A DNA stretch of 42,542 bases from Octopus bimaculoides (lineage: Eukaryota), in assembly GCF_001194135.2 (NCBI RefSeq), contig NC_068982.1:99481891-99524432 (forward strand), in the 5' to 3' direction. This document shows positions 23,541-42,542 of the stretch, piece by piece; position 1 is the stretch's first letter; each line of letters starts with the position of its first letter. The notes beneath the pieces are model-generated. The model was given only the letters and a program-made list of their open reading frames with translations. It had not been told where the DNA came from and made no database searches. The position numbers and the translations under genes were made by a program.

Positions 23541-26500
23541 TTGTCTTTGCACAGCTTCTAACTCTGGAGATGTACTACGGTGTCAGCTGTTCACTACCAA
23601 TGAACTAAGGTAACACCCCTTATTTTTCGAGCACCATACAGAGTATTCGAGCAGTTCCAAGCGGTGCTGTTTTCTGCAAGTGCTCCACCCTTATTGCAGC
23701 CCCTATTTGTTTAATGTATTTACCAGGGCTCCGACAATTATTGGTACTACTACCACCTTTTTCAGCGACCACAGCTGCTTAAACTCCCATGCGAACCTAT
23801 CATATCTATTGACTTTTCTTTCTTCATTATCGCATATCTTGTTGTCAGCTGGGCTTGCTATATCCATGAACCAGCATCGTTTGCTTTTTTTTTCTCAATT
23901 AACACTATGTCTGGTTTCCTATTCTCTATCTCATGGTCGAACTGAATCATAATATCCCACAGTATCTTTGCATTATCATTTTCGATGATGCCTTCGGGTT
24001 TACGTTCGTATCAATTTTTTGCTCTGTCACGTTTACACTTGTTGCAAAATGTATAATATGGACAATCCTTGCTATGTTGTCATGACGTCTCTTATATTCT
24101 TTCTGGGCTAGTGGCGTACATTGGCTGGTAATGTGCCATACAGTTTCACCATTTTGCCCACAAATTCTGCACTTATCACTTTCTAATGTTTTGTCTATTC
24201 TGTATTTGATGTAATTGGTTCTTAATGCGAACTCTTGGGCAGCACAGATTAGAGCCTCCGTTTCCGGTTTTAAATCACTTTTAGTCATTCAAAGCCATTT
24301 CTTTTCTTTGTTTGTTTTATCTTCAACATCCCTATGAAATTGTCCATGCATTCTTTATTTTATCCATCTATTTTCAGTTTCATTCATTCTCAAGGGCATG
24401 TACAGTGATTTATTTTTGCAATCTTCCATCCTACACAAGCCTAACCTTACTTCTAATAATAGCAGTTCTGTGGCATTTTTGACCTAACCTGCTTTGTTGT
24501 TTTCTTTTGCTCTAATGTTGTGTTCGCATCCAATCAGTCTTCTTCTCCCTCTTTTTATTGGTACATACTGTCTGTCTGTATCACTTTTTGGGTGGAGTGT
24601 TCCATATCTAGTAAGCAACTTCCTTGTCTTTCTGTCTAAACTGTTTCTTTCGTCTACTATCCATGCGATTACCCCTGCTCCATATCTAAGGAGTGAAACT
24701 GCCCAGATATTGATAGCTTTAATCTTATTCCGTCTGTTTAATTTCGACTTAAGGATCAGTCTCAGTCTGCGCAAGTACTCCACCTTAGATTTTTCTGTCA
24801 TTTCTTTCTCCATCAATTTATCCATTTCCAATATCTCCAAGTACTTATAACCCGTCTTTTCTACTTGTTTCATAATCTCCCACGCCGTTATCGCTAGTCC
24901 GTCCATACATTTAATTTTGCCTCTCTTCAAGATTAACACACCACACTTTCTCAGTCCAAACTCCATTCTAATATCAGCAGCACTGAAGGTATATACTGTA
25001 TCAACGAGGGAACTGACTTGGGATTCATGTTTACCATAAAGTTTGAGGTCAACCATGAATAACAAGTGGTTGACATTTTTGTTGGCGGCTCTTGAATACA
25101 TATCCAGCATTTGCTTTCCTTAGAATCAGTGTTAGTGGTATCATGCACAGTACAAAGATCAGTGGGGACAGGCAGTCTTCTTGGAAGATGCCTCTCCTGA
25201 TTTCTATTGTCCCTAAACGTCTTCCGTATGCTGTCAGTTGCGTCCTCCAATTCGCCATACTTTTTCCAAGTAATCGTTCAACATACGATGCAATTCCAAA
25301 TAGGTTCATACATTTCATAATACAAGAATGTGGGATCATATCGTATGCCTTACGATAATCGGTTCATGACATGGCTAAGTTAGTTTCCTTCCTCTTGCAG
25401 TCTCTAAGTACAGTTTTGTCTACCAGGAGTTGATCCTTGGTACATCTGCACTTACACCTGCAACACTTCTGCTCATGTTCGTACATTGACTCTGCGACTA
25501 TTCCAGTCAATAATTTCCACACTAGTGGCAAGCAATATATCGGCCTGTAATTGTCTGCCGTATTGCCTTTTTCGATGGTTTTCAAGCACAGCACTGTCCT
25601 ACCCATTGGCAACCACTCTGGTGTTACTTGGCTGGCATTTAAAAAGATGTTGAGTTGTACAGCTATTCGTGCATGACAATCACCAAATCTTTTTATCCAG
25701 TAGCCTTGAACTCCATGTGGTCCCGGGGTCTTCAACTTGCCCATTTTTTTTTCCTGATTTCCTTCGCTTCCCTAACTGAAATGACTAGTTCTGCCTGTTT
25801 TGGTCAAACTACTGTTTGTTTCAGTTCTTGCAACCATTCAGCATCCTCTTTGTGCTCCTTGTCGTTGCTCCAGATGTCACTCCAAAATCTTTGACTTTCA
25901 ATGTTATTTGATACCAACTTTTCATCTGTACACTCTCCATTTATTTCTTTGTAGAATATCATTTCATCTACTCTGAACAGACTGTTCTGCTGGTATCCAT
26001 TCATTCTTTGGTCGTATCTTACCATCTTTGCTTTCTTTGCAACGAGGCGCTGTTTCAGTTCCTCCATTACCACTTTCAGGCCCTTTCTTTCAATATCATA
26101 CTTCCTGTTCAGCGCCCTGTATTTTTGTTCGCTTTTAAGCCCCACCTCTCCTTTCGGTCTAACACAAAAATGTCTTTCGCGAGCTTATCTAACCTTGCCT
26201 GTATTCTTCTTTTCCACCGTGGATATTTTCTTTTATCACTCCCATTATCTTTCCTTTTCTTGACATCAATACCCACATTTTCTGCTACAATAATACTTGC
26301 TGCCTTGATCAAATTATTTGTTTCTGTGATGTTTTTTGTTCTGATGTATTTCAGAATTTCATTCACATTTTTCATTTCTTGGTTCAATTTCCACCGATCA
26401 ATCTTCGTAAGGTTGCAAATAATGTCAATGTCGTTCTCCTGTAGCCTTGCCTTTATTCTGTCGTAAACATCTGTCATGTCACCATTAGTTTTATTGTCTT

Positions 26501-27081
26501 ATTCCAGACCATCTATGTGTCTCTCATCGAGGAAGCTATCATTGTTCCTTTCCTGTGGTTTATTAGAGATCTCACCTGTTTTCTGCTATGAGATTATTTT
26601 TATCAGTAAACACTGTATTTTCATCGTTTCCTCTGCTGCTGTTTTCCAATACCCGTCTTTTGATAGCTTCGAGCTTTACTTCTGTGAACCAACGATTTTT
26701 TCTTATTGCTCTAGCTTGATCACATAAACTCTGTTCCGTTAGTTGAAACAATCTTCCTTCTCTCTATTGATCATATATACATTGTCGGTATCTCTTAATG
26801 CAAGCACCATTTTCGTCCACAGGGTTGCTCAAATAGTAACACTCCATGACCACAGCATAGACTTGTTTGCTCCATCTACGTCGTGTGTGATGGTCCATTG
26901 ATGGATAACGACAGGCTGGAGCCGGACCAGTATCCCCGAACCTGCCGAGTTCAACATTTTCACCATCAAGGGCTTCAGATTCATTACCACCGGTATTTAC
27001 AATATTTTGTTTTTTTCATTGTCATTCATATGAGGTAGCGATTAACAGTGTATCATCGATCAGGACATGGGGAGATTCCTT

Positions 27082-27082
<1 letters not shown>
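23541..27082 (-). mobile_element. Near full-length (about 3.5 kb) decayed R4/Dong-like RLE LINE
   Basis: Single-ORF layout: N-terminal RRRWSKQV...VMECYY...TEQSLCDQARAIRKN; KTPGPHGVQGYWIK; NYRPIYCL; DQLLVDK; DYRKAYDMIPHS; GIFQEDCLSPL; HLLFMVDLKLY (decayed FMDD); HPKSDTD; CRICG...HITSQC; RRHD; KPDIVL...DIASPAD; PIIVGAL. Many stops and frameshifts. Confidence 0.93.
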
Positions 27083-27112
<30 letters not shown>

Positions 27113-27135
27113 CATCACTGATATTATTATTTTCA
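27083..27135. repeat. (ATT)n microsatellite at the LINE 5' junction
   Basis: Read directly. Confidence 0.9.
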
Positions 27136-27414
27136 TTTTTTACTATTTGTCATTGTTAACATTTCCTCTGATCCGACATGAATTTTGGCTAATTGTCATT
27201 AACACTTTCGTGTTAGTACTAGGCTCCGGGTATTATTCACTAGCGTAGATAATTTGATAGAACACTGCCTCTAATTATAAACGAATAAATGTAGTAAACA
27301 AGACAAATAAAGAAACAAAAAACTAATGTCCACCCTTATTTTTTTCCGTGGGGGGGTATANNNNNNNNNNNNNNNNNNNNNNNNNNNNNNNNNNNNNNNN
27401 NNNNNNNNATATAT

Positions 27415-28135
27415 ATATCATACCTAATGCACCCACTATGATAAGAATTGTTTCTGTCTTTAGGTTCCACTTTCGAGTTACCTCTATTTCCAGATCTTTG
27501 TATTTTGAAAGTTTCTCCGTTTCTTTTAGAGAAATATTGTCATTTCCTGGCATTGATACATCGCTTAGAAAGCGTGTTTTTTTTCTTGGTGATCTCTGAC
27601 AATTATATCCGGCATGTTGGCCTTAATTTCTCTATCTGCGTGTGTTGACATATCCCAGAGCTTTCTCATTTTCTGTAACCTTTTCTGGCGTGTACCTATA
27701 CTATTTTTATTCTGTTGTTATTCCACAGTATTGGCATAGCTTCCAGTATTTATAGGTCCCAATTCTGTTGTGTCTGAATATATTCCTTCTTAGCCAGGAC
27801 TGAGCAGCCAGAGACAATATGGTTTATTGTTTCTTCTCCATCGCCACATATTCTGCAGTTACTCGTGTTTCTTTTCATTATGTTTTTGGTGATTTCTGAT
27901 GCTGCAATTAAAAACACTGCTTTGAGTCCTGAGCTTCTCAGCCATTGTTGGGATTTTGCTTTGACTATTTCTTTTCTGTTTAGCTTAACCCAATATTTGC
28001 CATGGAGGGGCTTTTCTTGCCATCGTTTTATCATGATTCGTTGCTGTTCCAGTTTTAGTTTGGATTGCAGTTGTTCTACAGCTTTTGATGTTTTTTTCCT
28101 CTTCATAGTTGTTATTATGACTTCTTTTTGATATT
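27415..28135 (-). mobile_element. R4/Dong-like LINE fragment, same subfamily as 20394-22013
   Basis: KPLHGKYW, CRICGDGEETINHIVSGCSVLAKKEY, KLSKYKDLEIEVTRKWNLKTETILIIVGALG. Collinear with about 20610-21350. Confidence 0.9.
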
Positions 28136-28153
28136 TATCAGCTTTTTTGTACT

Positions 28154-29698: not shown

Positions 29699-29785
<87 letters not shown>
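29699..29785. repeat. (TG)n tract of about 43 units, ending about 32 nt upstream of the GPCR exon acceptor
   Basis: Read directly. Confidence 0.97.
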
Positions 29786-29819: not shown

Positions 29820-29862
29820 AACAGCTGATACAGTTATGAAGCTCTGTTAAGCAGAAACAAAA
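29820..29862 (+). promoter_or_regulatory. 5' UTR part of the first coding exon with uORF MKLC* (29836-29850)
   Basis: Acceptor ...tttttaatctttcAG at 29818-29819 implies at least one upstream non-coding exon. ATG AAG CTC TGT TAA ends 12 nt before the main ATG. Confidence 0.6.
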
Positions 29863-29979
29863 ATGGATTCAGAGGAAGTCCCCGAAATTAATTTAACACT
29901 CAACATTACTGCTCAATATCTGGAGGAATATTCGTCCAACTGCACTCAGAACCTACGTAATGTCCACTATTTTTACCGG
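29863..29979 (+). CDS. CCAPR: CCAP/neuropeptide S-type GPCR, first coding exon (extracellular N-terminus)
   Basis: MDSEEVPEINLTLNITAQYLEEYSSNCTQNLRNVHYFYR (39 aa). Strong AAAATGG start context, three N-glycosylation sequons (NLT, NIT, NCT), phase-0 GTATGC donor at 29980. The HYFYR end matches the FYFYx stretch that precedes TEQ in CCAP receptors. Confidence 0.82.
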
Positions 29980-30312
29980 GTATGCCAATAGTGTTCAAAA
30001 CACTTTTATTTATAAGAAAATTACTGATGAAACCCAACGTTTTCCTGTTGTTGTTATTATTACTTCTATCATTGTTGTTATTGCCACTGTTGTTACTGTT
30101 GTTTCTTTTGTTGTTATTGCTGTTATTTCTCTTGCTTTTCAAGTGAACCAAATTATGGTTATAATCAGTAAAGGTGTATGTATATAAGTATGTATGCAAG
30201 TAACTAAGTGCGTACGTATGTTTGTACCAATGTAGTACTAAACCGCCAGTTCTAACCATGAACCGTGAACTTTGGGTTTTGCTTACAAGTATACTAGAAG
30301 GAAATAATGGGA

Positions 30313-31600
30313 TTTTTTATTGCCAACGAAGAGGGACTATAAAAGACATGTGGAGACAAAAAACAAATGAAAAAAATAAAAAATGTATGGTACAATGATA
30401 ATTGAAAATGAGAAATGAAAATGACGCTACTTGCCCCACCAAGCACCACCACTTACTTCCTTTTTCCCCTATATTCCATTATATCAAGTCCGTATTCTTT
30501 TTGAGTTCCTCATATTCTATATTGTCTGGTAATCCTTTCTTATCGTGCTCCACTTTCCAAACCTCGTATTCTCCATCTTTCAATTTCATTTTTCTGTTCT
30601 TCTGTTATTCGTATGCATGTATGGCGCCCGCCAATACTCGTCTCATCATCCACCCCAACAAACACTGTATCCTTCCATTTCACCACCTTTTTAACCAGTT
30701 CATCTTCTGCTTCCTCATACAATACAGACGCAAAACAACCAGTTGGAAGGGAAATTTGTGGGTTCCTGTGTGTTTATGCTTTTCTTTTCTGATTTTGTGT
30801 TGGAGGGGAGTGGGAAGGTTTAGTGCATGCAGAGAGAGGGTTGAGACGAAGAAGGTGTAGGTGGGCATTAGGTAATTGTGGGGTGGGGTTCTGTGTGTAT
30901 TGGACTCCATTTCTTCCTCTTTCACCTTTTTCTTTTCCTTGTGGTCTCCCATTCTTTCTCTGCCTTTTCTTCTTCCACCACCATTGGTAAGATTGTTTAT
31001 TCCTTTTGTTCTTCCTGGGGTTCCTCCTGGGGCTCTATCTCTTGTGGTGGCTCAGTTTTTTGGTGGGTGGAGGGCATTTCGCTCTAATGTGACGCTTCAG
31101 ACCACATTTAAAGCAGCGAGGGTTCTGTACTCCACCCTGACACTCATTATCGTGTCGGTCACCGTTATAGTCTCCACCATGTCCTCTACTGTCTCGTTCG
31201 ACCCCTGAATAATCATATTCAGAGTCTGACCCTTCCAATGAACACTTTTTGTTTTTCTAGCCTGGAGCACCGCTATCTTATCCTCATTACCAAGTAGGAC
31301 AGCGGCTGCTAACCAGGCCACATCCATCTCCGGTGGAATTCCTTCCACCCTAACCCTAGACACTTTCCGTCCCAGGTAAGTAGGTAGAAGTATGGTATTG
31401 ATGATTGATGCGTAGGGTATTGATGATTGAGTGAGAAAACAGCGATGGAATTATCAATAACAAAGTGATAATACGTTTTGAATCGAGGAATTTTTAATAC
31501 ATCATCTGGTTTCACTGTAAAATAATTTACGATTAAATTCCAAATAACCGTGGGCAAGTTCTTTCCTTTGCAATTTTTCAATTACAGTCCAATAAACTTT
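30313..31600 (-). mobile_element. Gag/ORF1-like element with CCHC zinc knuckle and no RT, antisense in GPCR intron 1
   Basis: Frameshifted ORF: ...PTYLGRKVSRVRVEGIPPEMDVAWLAAAV...MSVRVE...RCFKCGLKRHIRAKC (C-X2-C-X4-H-X4-C at 31074-31115), then a basic region and an unrecognised C-terminal segment. Minus-strand AATAAA at about 30316-30321. Confidence 0.65.
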
Positions 31601-31743
31601 TTGAAAAAGAGGATGATGATGATGATGATGACGATGATGACGACAACGATGACCATGATGATGGCACTAGACGTAGTTAACTGCTTGATTGCACTTGTCA
31701 TAAAATGTCATAAGTACTACAGCACAGTTCATGAAACAATTCT

Positions 31744-31820
<77 letters not shown>

Positions 31821-32035
31821 TCATGCTCATTCACACTCACTCACACACACGACATGACTTCAATACTCATGAACAATGCTCAACTGAATTCATGAGAGTC
31901 TCTTTCCTTGTGTACGGATGTGGGAGCAGGGGCATCTTTCATATTCTAGTCGTCTCAATAATGAACGACTTGCATTGGATGAAAGTATATTCCATATATG
32001 GTAGCAAGTATACACACAATATAATATTTTCTACT

Positions 32036-32236
32036 ATAGGCACAAGGCAAGAAATTTTGGAGAAGAGGGTTAGTCGATTACATCGACCTCAGTGAGTAAC
32101 TGGTACTAATTTCATCGAACCCGAAAGAATGAAAGGCAAAGACGACCCCGGCGGAATTTGAACTTAGAATGTAAAGACGGACGAAATGCACTAAGCATTT
32201 TGCCCGGCGTGCTAACGACTCTGCCAGCTCACCGCC
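32036..32236 (-). mobile_element. SINE family 1 (intronic, antisense)
   Basis: Reverse complement of GGCGGTGAGCTGGCAGAGTCGTTAGCACGCCGGGC...GTTCAAATTCCGCC... Confidence 0.9.
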
Positions 32237-32911
32237 TTATACATGCAATATAATGAACACGCGTCTAGACTGTGTCACCATTTCCTTTTGCAAGTATAAT
32301 ACAGAAACAGTTATGTATGAGTTACTTTGCAGGCAAACAGTGGACTGTCACTATAAAAATTATGATATTTACATAACTTAAGAGACTACTTGTGGCATCA
32401 GTGCCCTTTTTTTTTTATCACAACATTGAATATCATGATGATGAAAATTATAGAATAAAATTATAAAAAATGATGTTGATGAAGATGACATCGATGACGA
32501 TGATTATGACGACGACGATGACCATGATGAGACGACAATAGAATAAGAACAGTAATGAAGGGAAGCAAAATAACAGTATAATAATCTAATACTATAATAA
32601 AATAATGGTAAAAAAATTTGTGTGAGATGAGGAAAAGAAGCCCCTATCAATTTCGCCATGCAATATTGTAAATATCACGAATCAATAGATATATTCACAA
32701 TTTAGTGTATTATTACGTGGCACTTATATCACGTAATGTAAAGAACCACATTTCATATTACGAAATGATTTACAGAAAATGGTATGCATGCTTGTCACTT
32801 AGGATATATTTATCAAACATGTTTGGAAAATAAATTAGATGAAATTAAACAACAAATATGTGACATGGATATCATAACATGGTTGAAAACTTAAATTTTT
32901 CCAAACGTACA

Positions 32912-33122
32912 TACGAGAGTGTGCTGAAAAGTTCCTGGCTTTGGGTAAAAGAAAATACAGGAGGATCAGTTATGATTTTGTTCAACATATTCTCCTGTCA
33001 GACTCACACACTTATTGCAAAGGGGCTTCAGTTTTCCTAAACCCTGTGAAGGAACTCAGAAGGTTGGGCCTCCAGCCAGGCCTTTCCCAATACCCTTAAA
33101 CCAGGAACTTTTCAGTACCTGC
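32912..33122 (+). mobile_element. Mariner-type MITE, copy 2 (both TIRs present)
   Basis: TACGAGAGTGTGCTGAAAAGTTCCTGG at the left and CCAGGAACTTTTCAGTACC at the right. Homologous to 2025-2217. Confidence 0.8.
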
Positions 33123-33140
33123 TGCTTCTTTATGTAGTAA

Positions 33141-33250
33141 GATGGCGAATTAGTAAAGTTGTTAAGTGTGGAGTAAAATGCCACACTGTATTTGTTAAGT
33201 CTGTCCGTGCTCTGAGTTCAAATTGCTTTCATCCTTTTGGGGCGGGAGTT
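33141..33250 (+). mobile_element. Degenerate SINE family 1 5' part
   Basis: gatggcgaattagtaaag...ctctgagttcaaatt-gctttcatccttttgggg. Confidence 0.5.
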
Positions 33251-33653
33251 AGAAAAAATAAGACTTCAGAGTGATGGATTTGTAAAACCGAGAGAGCATG
33301 GCCTTCAAGTGAAGCCTTTGTTTTGGACAACACACGTGGAATGAAGAGAGAAAACATGCAGAGTCAAGTACAGGTCTTTCACAAAAAAACCTAAGCCAGG
33401 TTTGCGCATGTAGGCGCATATAGCTGGGCAATCCTAACCGACGGAGAACCTAGAATAGAATATTTTTGTAATAAGAGTAGTTTAGAGCAGTGAAAGCATT
33501 GCAATAAAAGAGGTACATCCGAGGTGAGTTTGAAATTAATCCTACTTTTATTTACAAGCTCGTACAGCTGCACACATGCATATAGATTCATATACACCTG
33601 TTAACCACTTTCTTTTTATGTATGTATATACGTATGCATGTATATATGTATGC

Positions 33654-33686
<33 letters not shown>

Positions 33687-34054
33687 NNNNNNNNNNNNNN
33701 NNNNNNNNNNNNNNNNNNNNNNNNNNNNNNNNNNNNNNNNNNNNNNNNNNNNNNNNNNNNNNNNNNNNNNNNNNNNNNNNNNNNNNNNNNNNNNNNNNNN
33801 NNNNNNNNNNNNNNNNNNNNNNNNNNNNNNNNNNNNNNNNNNNNNNNNNNNNNNNNNNNNNNNNNNNNNNNNNNNNNNNNNNNNNNNNNNNNNNNNNNNN
33901 NNNNNNNNNNNNNNNNNNNNNNNNNNNNNNNNNNNNNNNNNNNNNNNNNNNNNNNNNNNNNNNNNNNNNNNNNNNNNNNNNNNNNNNNNNNNNNNNNNNN
34001 NNNNNNNNNNNNNNNNNNNNNNNNNNNNNNNNNNNNNNNNNNNNNNNNNNNNNN

Positions 34055-34107
<53 letters not shown>

Positions 34108-34840
34108 ATATATGTGTGTGTGTGTGTGCATGTGTGTGTGTGTGTGTGTGTATGTGTGTGTATCTCACAGTTAAATTTAGAAAGATTATGAGGCAAGAGG
34201 AGAAAACAAGCAAATAATACATGAAATCAGATAAGTAAGACGCATGGGTGAAAAAGCGTAGAAATACACAGTGAAACAACAACAATAGATGAATGTACAC
34301 AATGAAAGTAAATACGCCAGTGAAAGAAACAGGAGGGAATCTAACATTTCGACTTAAATCCTTTAACAAATAGAAGGAAAAGGAATAAGTGAATCACGAG
34401 AATAGAAAATTGAATGATATCGAATTAATGACATCTGTTTAAATTTAGTGTTTAATAGAAGATGCATCCAGCCTACATATAGCTCTTTCCATCTCAACAC
34501 ATGATTTAGATCACAATACTCAACATCTACACTTATTCAAATCAAAATTTCGCTGAAACAAATACAGAGAGAATCGCGTAGAGTACCGCTACCACGTAAA
34601 GGCTATTCACGGAAATAGAATACTCGCCGACGTCATATTTGGTCAATATAAAGAAGCATTACTAGTTTACAAATAGTATATTAAAATTAACATAGGCTAT
34701 GAGGGCCTGGGCCTTGAATCGATTCATGTCTAATTTCAACAAACCCCAAAGAACGCAAAAAAAGTACATTTAGCATCGTAGGTTACCCACAAAAATCCCC
34801 CATTGATCACCTCCACAATCAAAGAAAAAATATTCCAGGC

Positions 34841-35024
34841 AACGAAAGATTCTCTAAGTGGTCAACGAATATGCTAGAAATAGTTGCTAGGTCTCCTCAA
34901 ATCACATCCTACTACCTTATAAAATTTTTTGATATGCAAAAAGACAAGATAGTCATGGCCAGATTGCCTTTCATCGTAGGGTTGATTTATCAAGTTTGAC
35001 TTGGGGCCAAACAATAACAACAAC
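34841..35024 (-). mobile_element. Short interspersed repeat family 4, copy 3
   Basis: tgctagaaatag...ctcctcaaatcaca...ggggccaaacaataacaac is the reverse complement of the family-4 pattern. Confidence 0.6.
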
Positions 35025-35129
35025 ATCACAATCTCCCCCCAAAACTACTATTCTAACTACTCTATTCCAACTTTAATCTTTGCCTATCATTACTTATTAA
35101 TACTGTTTTGTTATTGTTAATCTTTACAG

Positions 35130-35268
35130 ACTGGTCAGCTGGTGTTTCTGTTCTTGCTGTTATGTTTCATTACAAGTGGAAACTTAATCCTGTTAGGAGC
35201 TGTGACACTATCCCGAGCTGAGAAACGATCCAGAATGAATTTCTTCATAATGCACTTAGCCATTGCAG
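35130..35268 (+). CDS. CCAPR: CCAP/neuropeptide S-type GPCR, second coding exon (TM1-ICL1-TM2)
   Basis: TGQLVFLFLLLCFITSGNLILLGAVTLSRAEKRSRMNFFIMHLAIA plus G of the split Asp codon. TM1 GN motif, SRMNFFIMHLAIAD typical of CCAP/NPS receptors, tctttacAG acceptor (phase 0) and GTATGC donor (phase 1). Confidence 0.92.
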
Positions 35269-35902
35269 GTATGCTTCGCAGAAATTCTAAAATAATTTTA
35301 TGAAAAATAAACTTAATTTTCTTTCACAAATTCACGAAGTTTCATTGGACCATCCATTACTTTCACTTTCTTAAGCGTATGACGAATTTTCATCCAACTC
35401 CTGTCTAAATAATAATCTATCTTCGATAAATTTCAAGGATGATTCTACCTCAGTTAAATACGTTGTTTTATTTATTATATAAAAAAATTAGCTAGCTGAC
35501 TGAAACTATAACTCAAATATTTTAAACTGTTTACTTTTTTTTACGTTTTACATCAAATCCTGTTTTAGGTTTAATAGTAAAGAAAAATTGTTGCGAAATT
35601 AGGCCTGTAATCATACAAGAAGCCATTAACTTGTAAATGTAATTAAAGTCGATTCTGAGTTGAGTGAGAGAACTGAGGAGAAACTGATTGCTAACGTTTC
35701 AAAGATTTCAAATCCAATTATTTTGGTAAGGTATGCGAGTTAGCACTGATAGTGATTGTAGAAACATACTAATTAATAAAAGAATTCGAAGCGATTCCTG
35801 AGGATGAAACAATGACCGAAAAAGATGACTATATTTGAGAGTCGAGGAGAGGGACATTCAGCTGAAGACATCAGAATTTTCTTTTATATATATATATATA
35901 TA

Positions 35903-36318
35903 GACGTAGGAGTGGCTGTGTGGTAAGTAGCTTGCTTACCAACCACGTGGTCCCGGGTTCAGTCCTACTGCGTGGCATCTTGGGCAAGTGTCTTCTACTA
36001 TAGCCTCGGGCCGACCAAAGGCTTGTCAGTGGATTTGGTAGACGGAAACTGAAAGAAGACCGTCGTATATATGTATATATATATATATATANNNNNNNNN
36101 NNNNNNNNNNNNNNNNNNNNNNNNNNNNNNNNNNNNNNNNNNNNNNNNNNNNNNNNNNNNNNNNNNNNNNNNNNNNNNNNNNNNNNNNNGCTATAGAGAC
36201 CGATAGAATAAGTACTAGGCTTCTAAAGAATAAATCCTGGGGTTGATTTGCTCGACTAAAAGCGGTGCTCCAGCATGGCCACAGTCAAAAGACTGAAACA
36301 AGTAAAAGAGTAAAAGAG
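35903..36318 (+). mobile_element. tRNA-derived SINE family 2 with internal (TA/TG)n
   Basis: GGAGTGGCTGTGTGGTAAG (A-box), GGTTCAGTCC (B-box), CTTGGGCAAGTGTCTT, GACGGAAACTGAAAGAAG, internal microsatellite/gap, tail (GTAAAAGA)n. Confidence 0.9.
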
Positions 36319-36863
36319 TATATATATTACGAACATGGTGGACAGAGCATTTGCATTGGTGGATTCTATCTCAGCACTAGTTCCATCTTTTGGACTGTAG
36401 GTAGGCTGAAGCTATCACATTTCTGTATGGAAAAATATGCTTAAATGCTTTTCGCAAGGGAAATTCTTTCAAGCTGGTGACCTTTTGCTTGGTTGGGAGA
36501 AAACGAACATCATACAGCGAAATAAATCTGCCATGAAACCAGTTCACATTTACAATGTGAACTAGTTACATGGCAGATTATGTTGATTACAGTGATGAGC
36601 GTGTTCCTATTCTCACCATTATCAGTAATATAGTATTATTATGTATATTCGCAGATCATTTCATTTTCGTTTCTTCTATTGCTCTCTCCTACAGTATGAA
36701 AATCAAAAGGAGGGAAATTTCTCAGCATATGGATTATACGTAAACAATTCTTTAGATATGATTGATCTCCCACCCCCACCCCCTTTTAGAATAGTTAATC
36801 GTTTCATTGTTATGGAATTATGAACTACCTAAGAAAACAGAAACATTAAATAAGCATAAATAT

Positions 36864-37140
36864 GACTGTGCAGTCAAGGAGCTCGCTTTGCAACCACGTG
36901 GTTCCGGGTTCATTTCCAATACTTGAAACTTACGACAAAAGTATTCAGCTTTAACCTCGTGGTAATGCTTTGTGATAGACGGAAACTGTGTCGAAGCCCT
37001 TTACATATATATATATATATATATACATGTGTGTGTGTGTGTGTGTGTGTGTGCGTGCGCGCGTGAGACCTTGTCTTTATGTTAGTCCTCCCACTACTTT
37101 GACAACCAGTGTTTATTTACGTCCCCGTCACTTAGCAGTT
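36864..37140 (+). mobile_element. SINE family 2, diverged copy running into a gap
   Basis: caaccacgtggttccgggttca...gacggaaactg..gaagccc...(TA)(TG)...ttgacaacc...tttacgtccccgtcacttagc. Confidence 0.75.
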
Positions 37141-38063
37141 NNNNNNNNNNNNNNNNNNNNNNNNNNNNNNNNNNNNNNNNNNNNNNNNNNNNNNNNNNNN
37201 NNNNNNNNNNNNNNNNNNNNNNNNNNNNNNNNNNNNNNNNNNNNNNNNNNNNNNNNNNNNNNNNNNNNNNNNNNNNNNNNNNNNNNNNNNNNNNNNNNNN
37301 NNNNNNNNNNNNNNNNNNNNNNNNNNNNNNNNNNNNNNNNNNNNNNNNNNNNNNNNNNNNNNNNNNNNNNNNNNNNNNNNNNNNNNNNNNNNNNNNNNNN
37401 NNNNNNNNNNNNNNNNNNNNNNNNNNNNNNNNNNNNNNNNNNNNNNNNNNNNNNNNNNNNNNNNNNNNNNNNNNNNNNNNNNNNNNNNNNNNNNNNNNNN
37501 NNNNNNNNNNNNNNNNNNNNNNNNNNNNNNNNNNNNNNNNNNNNNNNNNNNNNNNNNNNNNNNNNNNNNNNNNNNNNNNNNNNNNNNNNNNNNNNNNNNN
37601 NNNNNNNNNNNNNNNNNNNNNNNNNNNNNNNNNNNNNNNNNNNNNNNNNNNNNNNNNNNNNNNNNNNNNNNNNNNNNNNNNNNNNNNNNNNNNNNNNNNN
37701 NNNNNNNNNNNNNNNNNNNNNNNNNNNNNNNNNNNNNNNNNNNNNNNNNNNNNNNNNNNNNNNNNNNNNNNNNNNNNNNNNNNNNNNNNNNNNNNNNNNN
37801 NNNNNNNNNNNNNNNNNNNNNNNNNNNNNNNNNNNNNNNNNNNNNNNNNNNNNNNNNNNNNNNNNNNNNNNNNNNNNNNNNNNNNNNNNNNNNNNNNNNN
37901 NNNNNNNNNNNNNNNNNNNNNNNNNNNNNNNNNNNNNNNNNNNNNNNNNNNNNNNNNNNNNNNNNNNNNNNNNNNNNNNNNNNNNNNNNNNNNNNNNNNN
38001 NNNNNNNNNNNNNNNNNNNNNNNNNNNNNNNNNNNNNNNNNNNNNNNNNNNNNNNNNNNNNNN

Positions 38064-38105
<42 letters not shown>

Positions 38106-38888
38106 CATAATATATGCAATATATATACATATACATACATATATAAACATATACATACAGATATACATAATACATATATAGATACACACACACACTCGAA
38201 CCGCACGCACACATATTTACATACAAGTCTGAATTACTGAATGACAATGAAGGTGATTATGTAAGTCCTGTTCTTTTGTCATTGATTAATTGATATTATG
38301 CTCGGTACTCTTCTGACGCTTTACTCTAAAGTTTTGAAATTGTTTTTGAACATTTTTTTTTTGCAATTGTCTGTCCTGTTTTTGATTTGATCTTACAAAC
38401 ACATTCCCAACTTTTAAGTCACTTCAAAAATGACCCTCAATCGAATAACGCTGTTTACAAGACTATGCTTGGAATGACCAATTATAAATACCACTGGAAC
38501 TCACACACAAGGTACAGGAAACTTACATAGACACCATTCTGCTTAAATAATAGAACTGCAGATACAATATCCTTACGTATCTCACGTCTGTTTTCTTTCC
38601 TTCACTTCGCTCTGTATTTCATATCTTCTCTATAATAACTATTACTTAAACATTTTCTCGCACCGTCTCTTATATATAAAATATTCCGAAACAGCTGTAA
38701 GACCTTCTCTTTATAAATGTCCTGAAAATTTCACAGCCTTGGATTTTTTATCTCATTCTGTTAATTTATATATATATATATATATATATATNNNNNNNNN
38801 NNNNNNNNNNNNNNNNNNNNNNNNNNNNNNNNNNNNNNNNNNNNNNNNNNNNNNNNNNNNNNNNNNNNNNNNNNNNNNNNNATATATA

Positions 38889-40158
38889 CAGGAGTTGGAC
38901 AAAAGAATAGAAACATCTAACATCATAGCATCATAATTTTGAAATATCTATAAAACCGTCAGAAGCTTGTTTATTTTTATGTTTTTATTTATTTACTATT
39001 AGTGTTGATTAATATGTTTAGCTAAAATTGCTGTTTCTTTTCAGATATCGTCAGAAAAAGGTAATTAAAATCCATTAAAATGACAGATCTATCGGACTTT
39101 CAAAGATGTCAAATTGTTGGTGTATGTATGGCAGGTGCGAAATGTTTGGTGTATCAAGAAGTACTGTCACGAAAGTAATAACAGCCTTTGAGGAAGAGGG
39201 AAAATCCTCCTCGTCGAAACTAAACTCCGGAAGAAAGCCAAATCTTTCAGATAGGGACCGTCGCACTCTTACTCGAATTGTTAGAAAGGATCACAAAAGT
39301 ACAGCTCCCAAAATTACTGCAGAGCTTAATGACCACCACGAGAACCCAGTTTTCACAAAAACTGTTCGCTGGGAGCTGAACAAAGCCGGATTTTAAGGGA
39401 GGGCTACAATCAGAAAACCACAACTTTCAAAAACAAACGTTGCAAAGCGTTTAGAATGGAATAAAAATCTACAGAGTTGGTCCCTAGAGCAGTGGAAGAA
39501 TGTTATTTTCTCAGACGAGTCATCCTTTACCTTATTTCTAACCACCGGCCGAGTATACATGTAGAGACAACCAAAAGAAGCATTTGACCCAAACTGCCTT
39601 CTTCCAAATGTTAAACATGGAGGAGGATCTGTAATGATCTGGTGGGCGGAGGGGGGGGGCTATATCTTGGAAATCCGCCGGCCCAATGGTTTCACTTCAT
39701 GGCAGAATTAATAGTCAAGACTATTTAAGTATTGTATCTGATTAAATTCATCCTATGGTTGCGGAACTTTTTCCGGGGTGGGGGACGCAATCTTTCAGGA
39801 TGATAATGCACCAATTCACACAGCTAAATTTGTTACTGAATGACACGAGGAACATTCTAGTGAAGTTGAACTTCTTATCTGACCACCACAGTCCCCAAAT
39901 CTCAATATCATTGAACATTTGTGGTGCATTTTAGAAAAACAAGTAAGGAGTGGATATCTTCCACCATCATCACTACAAGAACTGGAGACTGTTTTAGCTG
40001 AAGAATGGACAAAAATTCCTTTGGAAACAATTCAAACTTTGTACGAGTCCATACTTCGGAGAATTCAAGTTTAATTACTGCCAAAGGCCATCCTACCCCA
40101 TATTAAATAAAATTTGTTTGAAATTTTAAGGTGTTTCCATTATTTTGTCCAACCCCTG
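38889..40158 (+). mobile_element. Full-length decayed Tc1-like transposon with DD36E spacing, sense orientation in GPCR intron 2
   Basis: 30-bp TIRs (26/30 identical), TA on both sides, 1270 bp. Transposase from ATG 39080: MTDLSDFQR..., SGRKP, VIFSDES, KHGGGSVMIW, FQDDNAPIH...PPQSPNLNIIEHLW. Several stops and frameshifts. Confidence 0.95.
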
Positions 40159-40276
40159 TATGTGTGTGTGTGTGTGTGTNNNNNNNNNNNNNNNNNNNNN
40201 NNNNNNNNNNNNNNNNNNNNNNNNNNNNNNNNNNNNNNNNNNNNNNNNNNNNNNNNNNNNNNNNNNNNNNNNNNNN

Positions 40277-40321
<45 letters not shown>

Positions 40322-40461
40322 CATACATATGTGTGTGTATGTGTGTGTATGTGTGTGTATGTATGTATATGTACATATATACATCTATATATGTGTGTGT
40401 GCACGTGTACATATATATATATATATATGGGGGACACACACATACATATGTATGCATATAT

Positions 40462-40527
<66 letters not shown>

Positions 40528-40783
40528 ATAAATATTCTTTGCTGAAAATCAAGATTAATCGCGCTTTCTTTTCCATTCTGTACAGTAATTGGATCTGCAG
40601 ACGACATATTTCGCTATAATTTTTTTAATTTTCTTTTCGGACAAATGTTCAGAATAAGTTTAGCGTCACATCCATATCAAATAAAGAAAGGGAACTATCT
40701 TTGTAATATGATAACAATATATCGAGAAGTAATTATACACTATGTATTTAATCAAAAATCTTGTGCACCGACTCTTTTTTTAT

Positions 40784-40874
40784 TAGACGGTGGATGGTGG
40801 ATAGACGGTGGACTGGTGGATAGGTAGTGGACTGGTGGATAAGTAGAGGACTGATGGATAGGTAGTGGACTGAT
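40784..40874. repeat. About 19-bp minisatellite, about 5 units (TAGGTAGTGGACTGGTGGA-like)
   Basis: Units tagacggtggatggtgga / tagacggtggactggtgga / taggtagtggactggtgga / taagtagaggactgatgga / taggtagtggactgata. Confidence 0.85.
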
Positions 40875-40929
40875 ATAATCGCTAGAGAATGAAAATGCTT
40901 TGCTGTATTTAGTTGTGGCCCTTGCAGTA

Positions 40930-41020
40930 TGAAATTAAATTCTACGGAGGTCAGATTTAGCTTTCATCCTTCCGGAGTGCTTAAAATAAGGTACAAGTCC
41001 TGGTATCGATTTGATATTCC
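40930..41020 (+). mobile_element. Degenerate SINE family 1 core
   Basis: aaattctacggaggtcagatttagctttcatccttccggag...aaaataaggtac. Confidence 0.45.
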
Positions 41021-41404
41021 TACAAAGCAGCTTAAATGTAGAAGGAAATATAATAGGAGACTAAAACTACAATTATTTTATAATTCATCGTTTTGGTAAA
41101 TGTAAATGTAAATGTAAATGGGACGCTTTTGTGTATGTGTGCTGAGCCCCATGGAAAACATACCACGTATTGTTGCTTCTACATCAGGGACCCTGCTGCT
41201 TCTACACAAACAAATATTCTAGACCACTGTCTAACTCACCTAACAACCCACAACATTTCATCCATGTACATTCCGTCTCCTATGTCTGCTTCTTATCCCT
41301 ATTGCAATGAGCTATGTTCTTCTGAACGAACTAACTGTACACCATCTCCATCCGGGTCCACCCGACATTTTCGCATATTTTTTTACGTGCCACGCATACC
41401 GTGT

Positions 41405-41436
<32 letters not shown>

Positions 41437-41445
41437 GTTATTATT

Positions 41446-42266
41446 CATGGTATGCACGAATGTCTTACATTCGGAATCAATATCCATGATACCGGGTCAC
41501 AACCAGTTTCCTTAGATATCAAGGACCTTTCATACAATCCTTGCTGTTCCCAACAGAGGAGATTTCTAAATCAATGCAAATCTTGTAGTCACACCTGTCA
41601 TAATAAAGGAGCTGTTAAGTCTTGGTAACTGTGCCTAGGTCACCTATAATAACTGAGATTGCCAAAGGACTACAGGAACTTATTATGTGCATAATGGATT
41701 CCTCTTTTTCATTACATATTATGAACTTTGAACTTTTCGCAAGTTTGTTTATTTTTGCCCTAATGATTTTCATCCGCAACAACTGGCTTTGAGCAGCCCT
41801 TAGAAGTCCTTCCGTTTCTTTCTTAAGGTCTCCATTCTTTTGCCACAGCCAAGACTCATCTGCTGCGATGTCCTGCGTTTGTCTGAGATGCTGACCATCT
41901 AGTCCTTTTCCCCAGATGATGTTTCTTTCTCGCTCCTGCTTTCTTTTTTCTTGTATTTCGTTGCCATCATAGTAGCTTTTTTTCTCTTCTCGTCTAGCAG
42001 ACGAAATCAATTTTTCAAGATTGCTTCTCACTTACTCTTGTATCTCTCATTTTGCCATCTCTATAAAGTCTTCTATTAATACCAGACCTCTCCCCCTCCT
42101 TCTATGGTAGGCATAATCTATCGACACTGTCTCTGGGAAGTAACGATCTGTACAGAGACATTATCTTTCTGGTCTTACAATCTATGTCTCTTAGTTCTTC
42201 CTTAGTCCAGTTCAGGAAAGCAGCAGAATATCTTATTGGAGAGATCCTCCATGTGTTTACTTCAGT
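41446..42266 (-). mobile_element. 5'-truncated, internally deleted R4/Dong-like LINE
   Basis: IRYSAAFLNWTKEELRDID, GGRGLVLIED, LKKETEGLLRAAQSQ, ICNEKEESIMHIISSCSPLA joined directly to ISVIIGDLGTV, then LLGTARIV.KVLDI*, 3' UTR and an aataataac(agt)n tail. Confidence 0.88.
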
Positions 42267-42348
42267 GAGAGTCACTGTCTGGTACTGCAGTTAGAAGCCA
42301 TGAGAGTCACTGCCTGGTACTACATCAGAAGCCTTGAGAGTCACTGCC
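42267..42348. repeat. About 2.4 tandem copies of a 34-35-bp retroelement terminal motif
   Basis: gagagtcactgtctggtactgcagttagaagccat / gagagtcactgcctggtactacatcagaagcctt / gagagtcactgcc. Matches the end of 22093-22560. Confidence 0.85.

Positions 42349-42427
<79 letters not shown>
42349..42427. repeat. (ATT)n microsatellite
   Basis: Read directly. Confidence 0.97.
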
Positions 42428-42542
42428 CACCCTTTCATTCAGCCTTTTTTCCCCCGTCATATCACTATGTTGGACCGTTGAACTCTGCAAATTTTTTCAC
42501 TCTCCGTGTTTTTCATTCTTTCTCTACCCTTTTCCTCTTAAT

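What the first reader, a model, noticed from the sequence alone, without database searches (positions are those of the whole stretch)
29863..35268. Hidden host gene: CCAP/neuropeptide S-type receptor missed by the ORF track
Two short exons splice in frame across a 5150-nt GT-AG intron to give MDSEEVPEINLTLNITAQYLEEYSSNCTQNLRNVHYFYR|TGQLVFLFLLLCFITSGNLILLGAVTLSRAEKRSRMNFFIMHLAIA(D). This has the glycosylated N-terminus, TM1 GN and TM2 LAxAD of class A GPCRs and the CCAP/NPS receptor signature. These 256 coding nt are the only host CDS I found in 42.5 kb, and fragmented assemblies often drop such N-terminal exons.
Basis: partly seen in the sequence, partly recalled or inferred. Interest (0 to 1): 0.72.

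Follow-up and report, generated by a model that had tools for sequence, protein, structure and literature searches.

The report
Octopus CCAP-type receptor gene, first exons
The two short exons are real and are the first two coding exons of the Octopus bimaculoides CCAP-type (cardioacceleratory peptide) receptor gene, but public databases already annotate this gene with exactly these exons, so the finding is correct and ordinary.

Summary
Observation confirmed. Exon 1 (29863-29979) and exon 2 (35130-35268) have canonical GT-AG borders. They splice in frame to the 85-residue peptide plus the first base of an Asp codon. The N gap (33687-34054) lies wholly inside intron 1 and cannot affect the frame.

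The spliced peptide is 100% identical to residues 1-86 of XP_052834476.1, 'cardioacceleratory peptide receptor [Octopus bimaculoides]' (435 aa). The window is 100% identical to assembly GCA_001194135.2, chromosome CM046602.1.

Exon 3 is not in the window or its gaps. It lies about 3.4 kb past the window's 3' end and begins AT, completing Asp86 as predicted.

All 120 listed relatives that carry a functional name are called CCAP or NPS receptor(-like). Identity to a Rhodnius protein matching the deorphanised CCAP receptor is 41% (277 bits), against 152 bits for human oxytocin receptor.

The 'hidden gene' angle fails. The 2015 and current RefSeq models, plus O. sinensis, O. vulgaris and Argonauta models, all contain these N-terminal exons. 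The 2015 model lost the C-terminal exons instead. The ligand is inferred, not shown. Already known; low interest.

The parts
29863..29979 (+). Coding exon 1 (117 nt, aa 1-39). It encodes the start Met and the extracellular N-terminus with sequons N10 (NLT), N14 (NIT) and N26 (NCT). Donor is CGG|GTATGC, phase 0.
   Evidence: Searches give the sequence, with an in-frame TAA at 29848-29850 upstream. One search shows 100% identity to XP_052834476.1 residues 1-39. One search gives a unique GT-AG solution. Homologous 39-aa N-termini occur in O. sinensis, O. vulgaris and Argonauta.
29980..35129 (+). Intron 1 (5150 nt as assembled, GT...AG, phase 0). It contains the assembly gap 33687-34054 (368 N), flanked by TA/TG microsatellites.
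   Evidence: The same gap persists in GCA_001194135.2, so the true length is unknown.
35130..35268 (+). Coding exon 2 (139 nt, aa 40-85 plus the first base of the Asp86 codon). It encodes TM1 (GN, N1.50 = N57), intracellular loop 1 (SRAEKRSRM) and the start of TM2 (NFFIMHLAIA). Acceptor is TTTACAG|ACT and donor is GCAG|GTATGC, phase 1.
   Evidence: The same exon with the same borders occurs in another species' contig L001. Among related hits, 21 unspliced genomic ORFs break at the same point.
35269..42542 (+). First 7.3 kb of intron 2. The whole intron is 10,682 nt as assembled, 4,021 of them N. This stretch holds a decayed Tc1/mariner-type transposase (about 39079-40071, +) and four gaps. Exon 3 lies beyond the window, at window-equivalent 45951-46054.
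   Evidence: Searches find no further receptor-like coding segment in the window. One search gives the HTH_Tnp_Tc3_2 and DDE_3 hits. map the window onto L002.

Best explanation
The window is Octopus bimaculoides genomic DNA. The finding is the 5' end of the already-annotated gene for a CCAP-type receptor (RefSeq XP_052834476.1, 'cardioacceleratory peptide receptor'). That is coding exons 1 and 2 of nine, plus intron 1 and the first part of intron 2.

Shown here:
- Exon 1 encodes a 39-residue extracellular N-terminus with three N-glycosylation sequons.
- Exon 2 encodes TM1 (N1.50 in GN), the basic first intracellular loop with the SRM motif, and TM2 up to the sodium-pocket Asp2.50, whose codon is split by a phase-1 intron.
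- That intron position recurs in other members of the family.
- The rest of the protein lies outside the window and carries the other class A switches: DRL in place of DRY, CWSP and NPIIY.

Inferred:
- A CCAP-type amidated, disulfide-bridged neuropeptide binds the extracellular face.
- The receptor then signals through heterotrimeric G proteins, giving Ca2+ mobilisation as reported for the Rhodnius CCAP receptor.
- In cephalopods it plausibly mediates the reported CCAP effects on circulation and oocyte transport.
- Which octopus peptide activates this particular paralogue is untested.
For: - Identity: the spliced peptide matches XP_052834476.1 residues 1-86 at 100%.
- Locus: the window is 100% identical, gaps included, to GCA_001194135.2 CM046602.1, with window position = L002 position + 19862.
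- Gene model: a unique nine-exon GT-AG model translates exactly to the 435-aa protein.
- Orthologues with the same N-terminal architecture: O. sinensis and O. vulgaris at 97%, Argonauta hians at 78% over the 86 residues.
- Transcript-like evidence: an intronless 425-aa ORF sits on 2.3-kb contigs in two sequencing runs of a related species.
- Family: Pfam 7tm_1 scores 154.7 bits over the full profile. All 120 listed hits that carry a functional name are CCAP or NPS receptor(-like).
- Link to a characterised receptor: 41% identity and 277 bits to P0141, a 374-aa Rhodnius protein. It matches the deorphanised RhoprCCAPR in length and in DRL at residues 127-129. RhoprCCAPR responds to CCAP with EC50 12 nM and not to AKH or corazonin (PMC3706402).
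- Contrast: human oxytocin receptor scores 152 bits.
- Motifs GN, LAIAD, DRL, CWSP and NPIIY are present.
- Conserved phase-1 intron: 21 unspliced ORFs end ...HLAxAG, and 15 spliced models continue with D.
- Physiology in molluscs: PMC6660194 and PMC8398477.
Against: - No ligand-binding or expression data exist for this octopus receptor. The name comes from automated homology-based annotation.
- No RNA-seq junction reads for O. bimaculoides could be inspected here.
- Octopus has at least one more CCAP-receptor-like paralogue (P0064, 41% identity), so the ligand pairing of each is open.
- My NJ tree has one outgroup and weak backbone support (17-44%), so the subgroup assignment within molluscan receptors is unresolved.
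- The fragment in the window is too short to classify on its own.
Confidence: 0.95

Rival explanations
1. It is a member of the CCAP/NPS receptor family by descent, but this cephalopod paralogue has a ligand other than canonical CCAP. That could be a different CCAP-precursor peptide or another peptide. The annotated name would then mislead about function.
For: The cephalopod clade is a well-supported (100%) and fairly long branch, separate from the second octopus paralogue P0064. It is no closer to other molluscan receptors (43-48%) than to insect ones (41-47%). No octopus CCAP receptor deorphanisation turned up in my literature searches.
Against: The 7TM core is strongly conserved with a deorphanised insect CCAP receptor (277 bits), including the family's DRL variant. 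CCAP peptides exist and are bioactive in cuttlefish.
Confidence: 0.15
2. The receptor is really of the vasopressin/oxytocin type (cephalotocin or octopressin) or the GnRH/corazonin type, not the CCAP/NPS type.
For: The best solved-structure matches are the oxytocin, V1a, V2 and GnRH receptors. The KxSRM...HLxxAD motif is shared by this whole receptor superfamily (alignment).
Against: The PDB copy returned no CCAP or NPS receptor among the matches shown, so that ranking only identifies the sister family. Against sequence databases every top hit is CCAP or NPS receptor(-like), at about twice the bit score (277-311 against 152).
Confidence: 0.02
3. The locus is a non-functional pseudogene, or the two ORFs are chance open frames.
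For: None specific. No expression data for O. bimaculoides were available here.
Against: All nine exons are open, and each junction has a single canonical GT-AG solution. The protein is 81% identical between Octopus and Argonauta and 59% identical to a transcript-like contig from another cephalopod. tblastn E-values are 1e-21 and 9e-17.
Confidence: 0.02

Closest known systems
XP_052834476.1, cardioacceleratory peptide receptor [Octopus bimaculoides] (gene on CM046602.1, GCA_001194135.2)
   Same: It is the same gene.
   Different: Nothing differs in the window. The window simply contains only 2 of the 9 coding exons.
XP_014768813.1 (2015 RefSeq model, 340 aa) for the same gene
   Same: It matches over residues 1-295 and includes both N-terminal exons.
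   Different: It diverges after residue 295, which is the end of exon 7. Exons 8-9 lie beyond a 13.1-kb intron holding 3.9 kb of N. So the C-terminus was lost, not the N-terminus.
Rhodnius prolixus CCAP receptor (RhoprCCAPR, KC004225; PMC3706402). Insect CCAP receptors such as Drosophila CG6111 are described in that paper only.
   Same: Shared features are the class A 7TM fold, 41% identity over 371 residues (277 bits), the RMNFFIMHLA motif, DRL in place of DRY, and NSxxNPxxY. Both genes have many exons: 10 in Rhodnius and 9 coding exons here.
   Different: The N- and C-termini and intracellular loop 3 are unrelated. The insect receptor is experimentally activated by CCAP, whereas the octopus one is untested.
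Vertebrate neuropeptide S receptor (NPSR1) and echinoderm NGFFFamide receptor
   Same: The literature treats these as the deuterostome orthologues of CCAP receptors (PMC4422128; PMC8557429). Some molluscan relatives are auto-named 'neuropeptide S receptor-like'.
   Different: I did not compare them directly. No NPSR1 sequence or structure came up in the searches.
Oxytocin and vasopressin receptors (PDB 7ryc, 7qvm, 9uwi, 7kh0)
   Same: They are the closest solved structures, and the literature treats them as a paralogous family. They share ICL1/TM2 (SRxxFFxKHLSIAD), CWxP and NPxxY.
   Different: The score is about half (152 against 277-311 bits). The ligands differ, and this is not the orthologous group.

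Membership tests
Class A (rhodopsin-like) GPCR, Pfam PF00001 7tm_1 | The Pfam 7tm_1 profile matches above its gathering score. | tested here: met
   The full protein P0061 scores 154.7 bits against a 30.5 cutoff over profile positions 1-260. The window's 86-aa fragment alone scores only 16.2 bits, below threshold.
Class A (rhodopsin-like) GPCR | The conserved microswitch residues are present: N1.50, D2.50, D/ERY, CWxP, NPxxY and the TM3-ECL2 cysteines. | tested here: met
   G56-N57 and LAIAD (D86) are encoded or started in the window. DRL137-139, CWSP299-302, NPIIY336-340, C113 and C183/C189 lie in the rest of the protein. DRY is replaced by DRL, as in the deorphanised Rhodnius CCAP receptor.
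CCAP / NPS / NG-peptide receptor orthology group | The closest relatives are CCAP or NPS receptors rather than vasopressin/oxytocin or GnRH/AKH/corazonin receptors. | tested here: met
   Every functionally named hit among the 120 listed is CCAP or NPS receptor(-like). The score is 277 bits to Rhodnius CCAPR against 152 bits to human OXTR. This rests on similarity and automated names. A formal multi-outgroup phylogeny was not done; one search has one outgroup only.
CCAP / NPS / NG-peptide receptor orthology group | Shared gene structure: a phase-1 intron splits the Asp2.50 codon. I propose this as a family trait from the hits found here; it is not a published criterion. | tested here: met
   The window has GCAG|GT and exon 3 starts AT. 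L001 has the same borders. Among related hits, 21 unspliced ORFs end ...HLAxAG and 15 spliced models continue with D. I did not check NPSR1 or the vasopressin-type genes.
CCAP / NPS / NG-peptide receptor orthology group | The receptor is activated by a CCAP-type peptide. | not testable with these tools
   This needs heterologous expression and a Ca2+/cAMP assay. Only insect receptors were seen to be deorphanised in the papers read.
Vasopressin/oxytocin-type (cephalotocin/octopressin) receptors | Closest relatives fall within the vasopressin/oxytocin receptor clade. | tested here: not met
   OXTR, V1aR and V2R are the best solved structures, but at about half the score of CCAP receptors. No vasopressin-type name appears among the top 120 database hits.

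The most novel reading that the evidence does not exclude
This cephalopod-specific, long-branch CCAP-receptor paralogue may have diverged in ligand preference or coupling from the second octopus CCAP-receptor-like gene (P0064 lineage). The two receptors would then divide up the several peptides of the cephalopod CCAP precursor, or one would have acquired a new ligand. The window adds nothing towards this beyond the N-terminal 86 residues.
Probability: 0.15. Interest if true: 0.3.

Novelty: already known. Interest (0 to 1): 0.08.

Why it matters
It matters little beyond quality control. The result shows that the first-stage reader can recover short eukaryotic exons and name the receptor family from raw sequence. 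The gene, its N-terminal exons and its family assignment are already in RefSeq for O. bimaculoides, O. sinensis, O. vulgaris and Argonauta.

Three modest points remain useful:
- The exact nine-exon structure is now mapped onto the gapped assembly.
- The truncation of the 2015 model is explained.
- The phase-1 intron in the Asp2.50 codon recurs in many unspliced contigs from other species, which makes it a handy marker for finding this exon in fragmented assemblies.

The receptor's ligand is still untested in octopus, but that is an ordinary deorphanisation task.

Tried and rejected
- The first word-indexed protein search with the 86-aa peptide returned only one hit, P0001, an unspliced exon-2 ORF from another species. 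It missed the octopus protein. The exhaustive phmmer search of exon 2 was needed to find it.
- Pfam and PDB searches on the fragment alone were too weak to classify it. The PDB search was also contaminated by spurious matches of the N-terminus to GLIC ion channels.
- The search for exon 3 in 35269-42542 failed, both by open-frame listing and by tblastn with orthologues. Nothing was found, and it was later shown to lie outside the window.
- The idea that exon 3 sits in the 37141-38063 gap is rejected. The annotated exon 3 is 3.4 kb beyond the window's end.
- The idea that DRL instead of DRY marks a novel change is rejected. The deorphanised Rhodnius CCAP receptor has the same DRL.
- Literature searches for a deorphanised cephalopod or oyster CCAP receptor found only indirect mentions in the open-access library.
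- The rough NJ tree did not resolve the molluscan paralogue groups.
Full report
**1. The observation**

The sequence is as described. An ATG at 29863 opens a 117-nt frame that ends CGG|GTATGC at 29979/29980. An in-frame TAA at 29848-29850 lies just upstream, so the frame cannot extend further 5' within this exon. After a pyrimidine-rich tract and TTTACAG, a second open segment runs 35130-35268 (139 nt) and ends GCAG|GTATGC. Joined, they give 256 nt, which is the quoted 85 residues plus one G.

The window has ten N gaps. The flagged one (33687-34054, 368 N) lies entirely between the donor and the acceptor, flanked by TA/TG microsatellites. It therefore cannot break the reading frame. It only makes the intron's real length uncertain.

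**2. What the fragment says on its own**

The fragment alone says little. Pfam 7tm_1 matches residues 56-86 at 16.2 bits, below the 30.5 cutoff. Against solved structures the best GPCR is the oxytocin receptor at E = 0.013-0.024, followed by generic aminergic and peptide receptors. The word-indexed protein search gave a single hit, P0001. This is a 144-aa ORF called on a 2.6-kb contig from another organism. It contains the same exon with the same borders (TTTTCAG|ACC...ATTGCAG|GTAGG) and then reads through into intron sequence. That was the first sign that exon 2 is a conserved, real exon.

**3. Identification**

An exhaustive phmmer search with exon 2 gave 42 hits. The top hit was P0002, 'cardioacceleratory peptide receptor-like [Argonauta hians]', 93% identical over its residues 40-85.

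Searching with P0002 brought up P0061 = XP_052834476.1, 'cardioacceleratory peptide receptor [Octopus bimaculoides]', 435 aa. Its first 86 residues are identical to the spliced peptide plus Asp. The same 90% cluster holds O. sinensis XP_036356369.1, O. vulgaris CAI9717223.1 and the older O. bimaculoides model XP_014768813.1.

The genomic locus of P0061 is GCA_001194135.2, CM046602.1:99,501,753-99,567,279 (L002). It is 100% identical to window 19863-42542, same N gaps included, with window position = L002 position + 19862.

**4. Gene model**

I required GT-AG introns and exact translation to P0061. Each junction then had exactly one solution, giving nine coding exons (1308 nt).

Intron 2 is 10,682 nt as assembled, of which 4,021 are N. 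Exon 3 lies at window-equivalent 45951-46054, about 3.4 kb beyond the window's end. It begins AT TTA, so G|AT completes Asp86. tblastn of the octopus proteins against the window finds only the two exons (E = 1e-21 and 9e-17); all other HSPs of these octopod orthologue models have E > 0.4. So exon 3 is not in the window and not in the 37141-38063 gap.

The 2015 model matches through residue 295, the end of exon 7, and then diverges. Exons 8-9 lie behind a 13.1-kb intron with 3.9 kb of N. In this gene the fragmented assembly cost the C-terminus, not the N-terminus.

**5. Family**

The full protein matches Pfam 7tm_1 end to end at 154.7 bits. It carries N1.50 (G56-N57), D2.50 (LAIAD), DRL at the DRY position, CWSP and NPIIY, plus cysteines C113 and C183/C189 for the usual TM3-ECL2 disulfide.

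Every functionally named protein among the 120 best database relatives is a CCAP receptor(-like) or NPS receptor(-like). They come from molluscs, brachiopods, nemerteans and arthropods.

P0061 is 41% identical (277 bits) to P0141, a 374-aa Rhodnius prolixus protein. P0141 agrees in length and in DRL at residues 127-129 with the cloned RhoprCCAPR. That receptor is activated by CCAP (EC50 12 nM) and not by AKH, corazonin or an extended FMRFamide (PMC3706402). The DRL variant is therefore a family trait, not an octopus novelty.

Human oxytocin receptor, the best solved structure, scores 152 bits. The literature treats CCAP, NPS and NG-peptide receptors as one bilaterian orthology group, paralogous to vasopressin-type receptors (PMC4422128; PMC8557429).

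**6. Gene-structure signature**

Of the 42 exon-2 hits, 36 contain the RMNFFIMHLAxA-type motif. In 15 of them, which are spliced gene models or transcripts, the next residue is D followed by L or F. In 21 short ORFs called on unspliced contigs, the next residue is G followed by unrelated sequence. That is what a GT donor placed after the first base of the Asp codon produces. The phase-1 intron in the Asp2.50 codon therefore appears conserved across many members of this family.

A 425-aa relative (P0062, 59% identical to the Argonauta orthologue P0002) sits uninterrupted on 2.3-kb contigs in two sequencing runs. It looks like assembled mRNA, which supports the exon 1-2-3 continuity in a related cephalopod.

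**7. Paralogy**

Octopus has at least one further CCAP-receptor-like gene (P0064, O. vulgaris, 41% identity). I built a rough NJ tree from 36 sequences and 351 columns, with 100 bootstraps and OXTR as the sole outgroup. It recovers the cephalopod clade of this gene at 100%, separate from P0064. The backbone among molluscan groups has only 17-44% support. I draw no conclusion beyond 'two distinct paralogues'.

**8. Mechanism**

Shown: the window encodes the extracellular N-terminus with three sequons, TM1, intracellular loop 1 and most of TM2 of a class A peptide GPCR.

Inferred from family membership: a CCAP-type cyclic amidated peptide binds, and G-protein signalling follows. The Rhodnius assay used Ca2+ mobilisation.

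Reported roles of CCAP in molluscs include vena cava tonus and oocyte transport in cuttlefish, and gill and osmotic regulation and spawning in oysters (PMC6660194; PMC8398477). No deorphanisation of this octopus receptor was found.

**9. Rest of the window**

I found no other host coding sequence. The longer ORFs are transposon remnants or microsatellite translations:
- A Mos1-type HTH at 12135-12608 (-).
- A hAT dimerisation domain at 7474-7878 (-).
- A frameshifted Tc1-type transposase at about 39079-40071 (+) inside intron 2.
- Reverse-transcriptase-associated pieces at 21058-28106 (-) and 41615-42031 (-).

**10. Verdict**

It is not a discovery, because the gene and these exons are already annotated in public databases. 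Novelty: already known. Interest: low.

Noticed in passing
window 39079-40071 (+): A decayed Tc1/mariner-type transposase lies inside intron 2. It is spread over several frames, with HTH_Tnp_Tc3_2 and HTH_32 hits at 39079-39393 and a DDE_3 hit at 39883-40071.
   Followed up: partly
window 12135-12608 (-) and 399-968 (-): The ORF at 12135-12608 has a Mos1-transposase HTH_48 domain, marking a mariner remnant. The ORF at 399-968 reads like the C-terminal part of a mariner-type transposase but has no Pfam hit.
   Followed up: partly
window 7474-7878 (-), with 9023-9304 (-): The ORF at 7474-7878 has a hAT-family C-terminal dimerisation domain. The nearby ORF at 9023-9304 may belong to the same hAT element remnant.
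   Followed up: partly
window 21058-21615, 23947-26477, 27750-28106 and 41615-42031 (all -): These are non-LTR retrotransposon-like ORF fragments. One has a zf-RVT hit (41615-42031). Window 20611-21380 and 27416-28144 are copies of one another at 81% identity.
   Followed up: partly
all ten N gaps (e.g. 1046-1788, 11218-11632, 33687-34054, 37141-38063, 40180-40276): The gaps whose edges I read border TG/TA/CA-type microsatellites. The seven gaps inside the overlap are carried over unchanged into the chromosome-level assembly GCA_001194135.2. The window's 3' end (42542) abuts another gap in that assembly.
   Followed up: yes
window 29699-29785 and 29836-29850: A perfect (TG)43 microsatellite ends 78 nt upstream of the start codon. 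A 4-codon upstream ORF (ATG AAG CTC TGT TAA) sits in frame between an acceptor-like site (tttcag|, 29819/29820) and the ATG. The coding exon may therefore start at 29820 with a spliced 5' UTR.
   Followed up: no
L002 40672-53785 (outside the window): The 2015 RefSeq model XP_014768813.1 diverges exactly at the end of exon 7 (residue 295). Exons 8-9 lie beyond a 13.1-kb intron with 3.9 kb of N, which explains that truncated model.
   Followed up: yes
hits P0001-P0042; L001 390-530: Twenty-one short ORFs called on unspliced contigs from other organisms end ...HLAxAG at the same point. This indicates a conserved phase-1 intron in the Asp2.50 codon of CCAP-type receptor genes.
   Followed up: partly
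window 29906-30259 (-): A 117-aa ORF on the opposite strand overlaps exon 1. It is Asn-rich and low-complexity, a translation of the TTG/TTA-rich intron repeat, and is most likely a chance frame.
   Followed up: no
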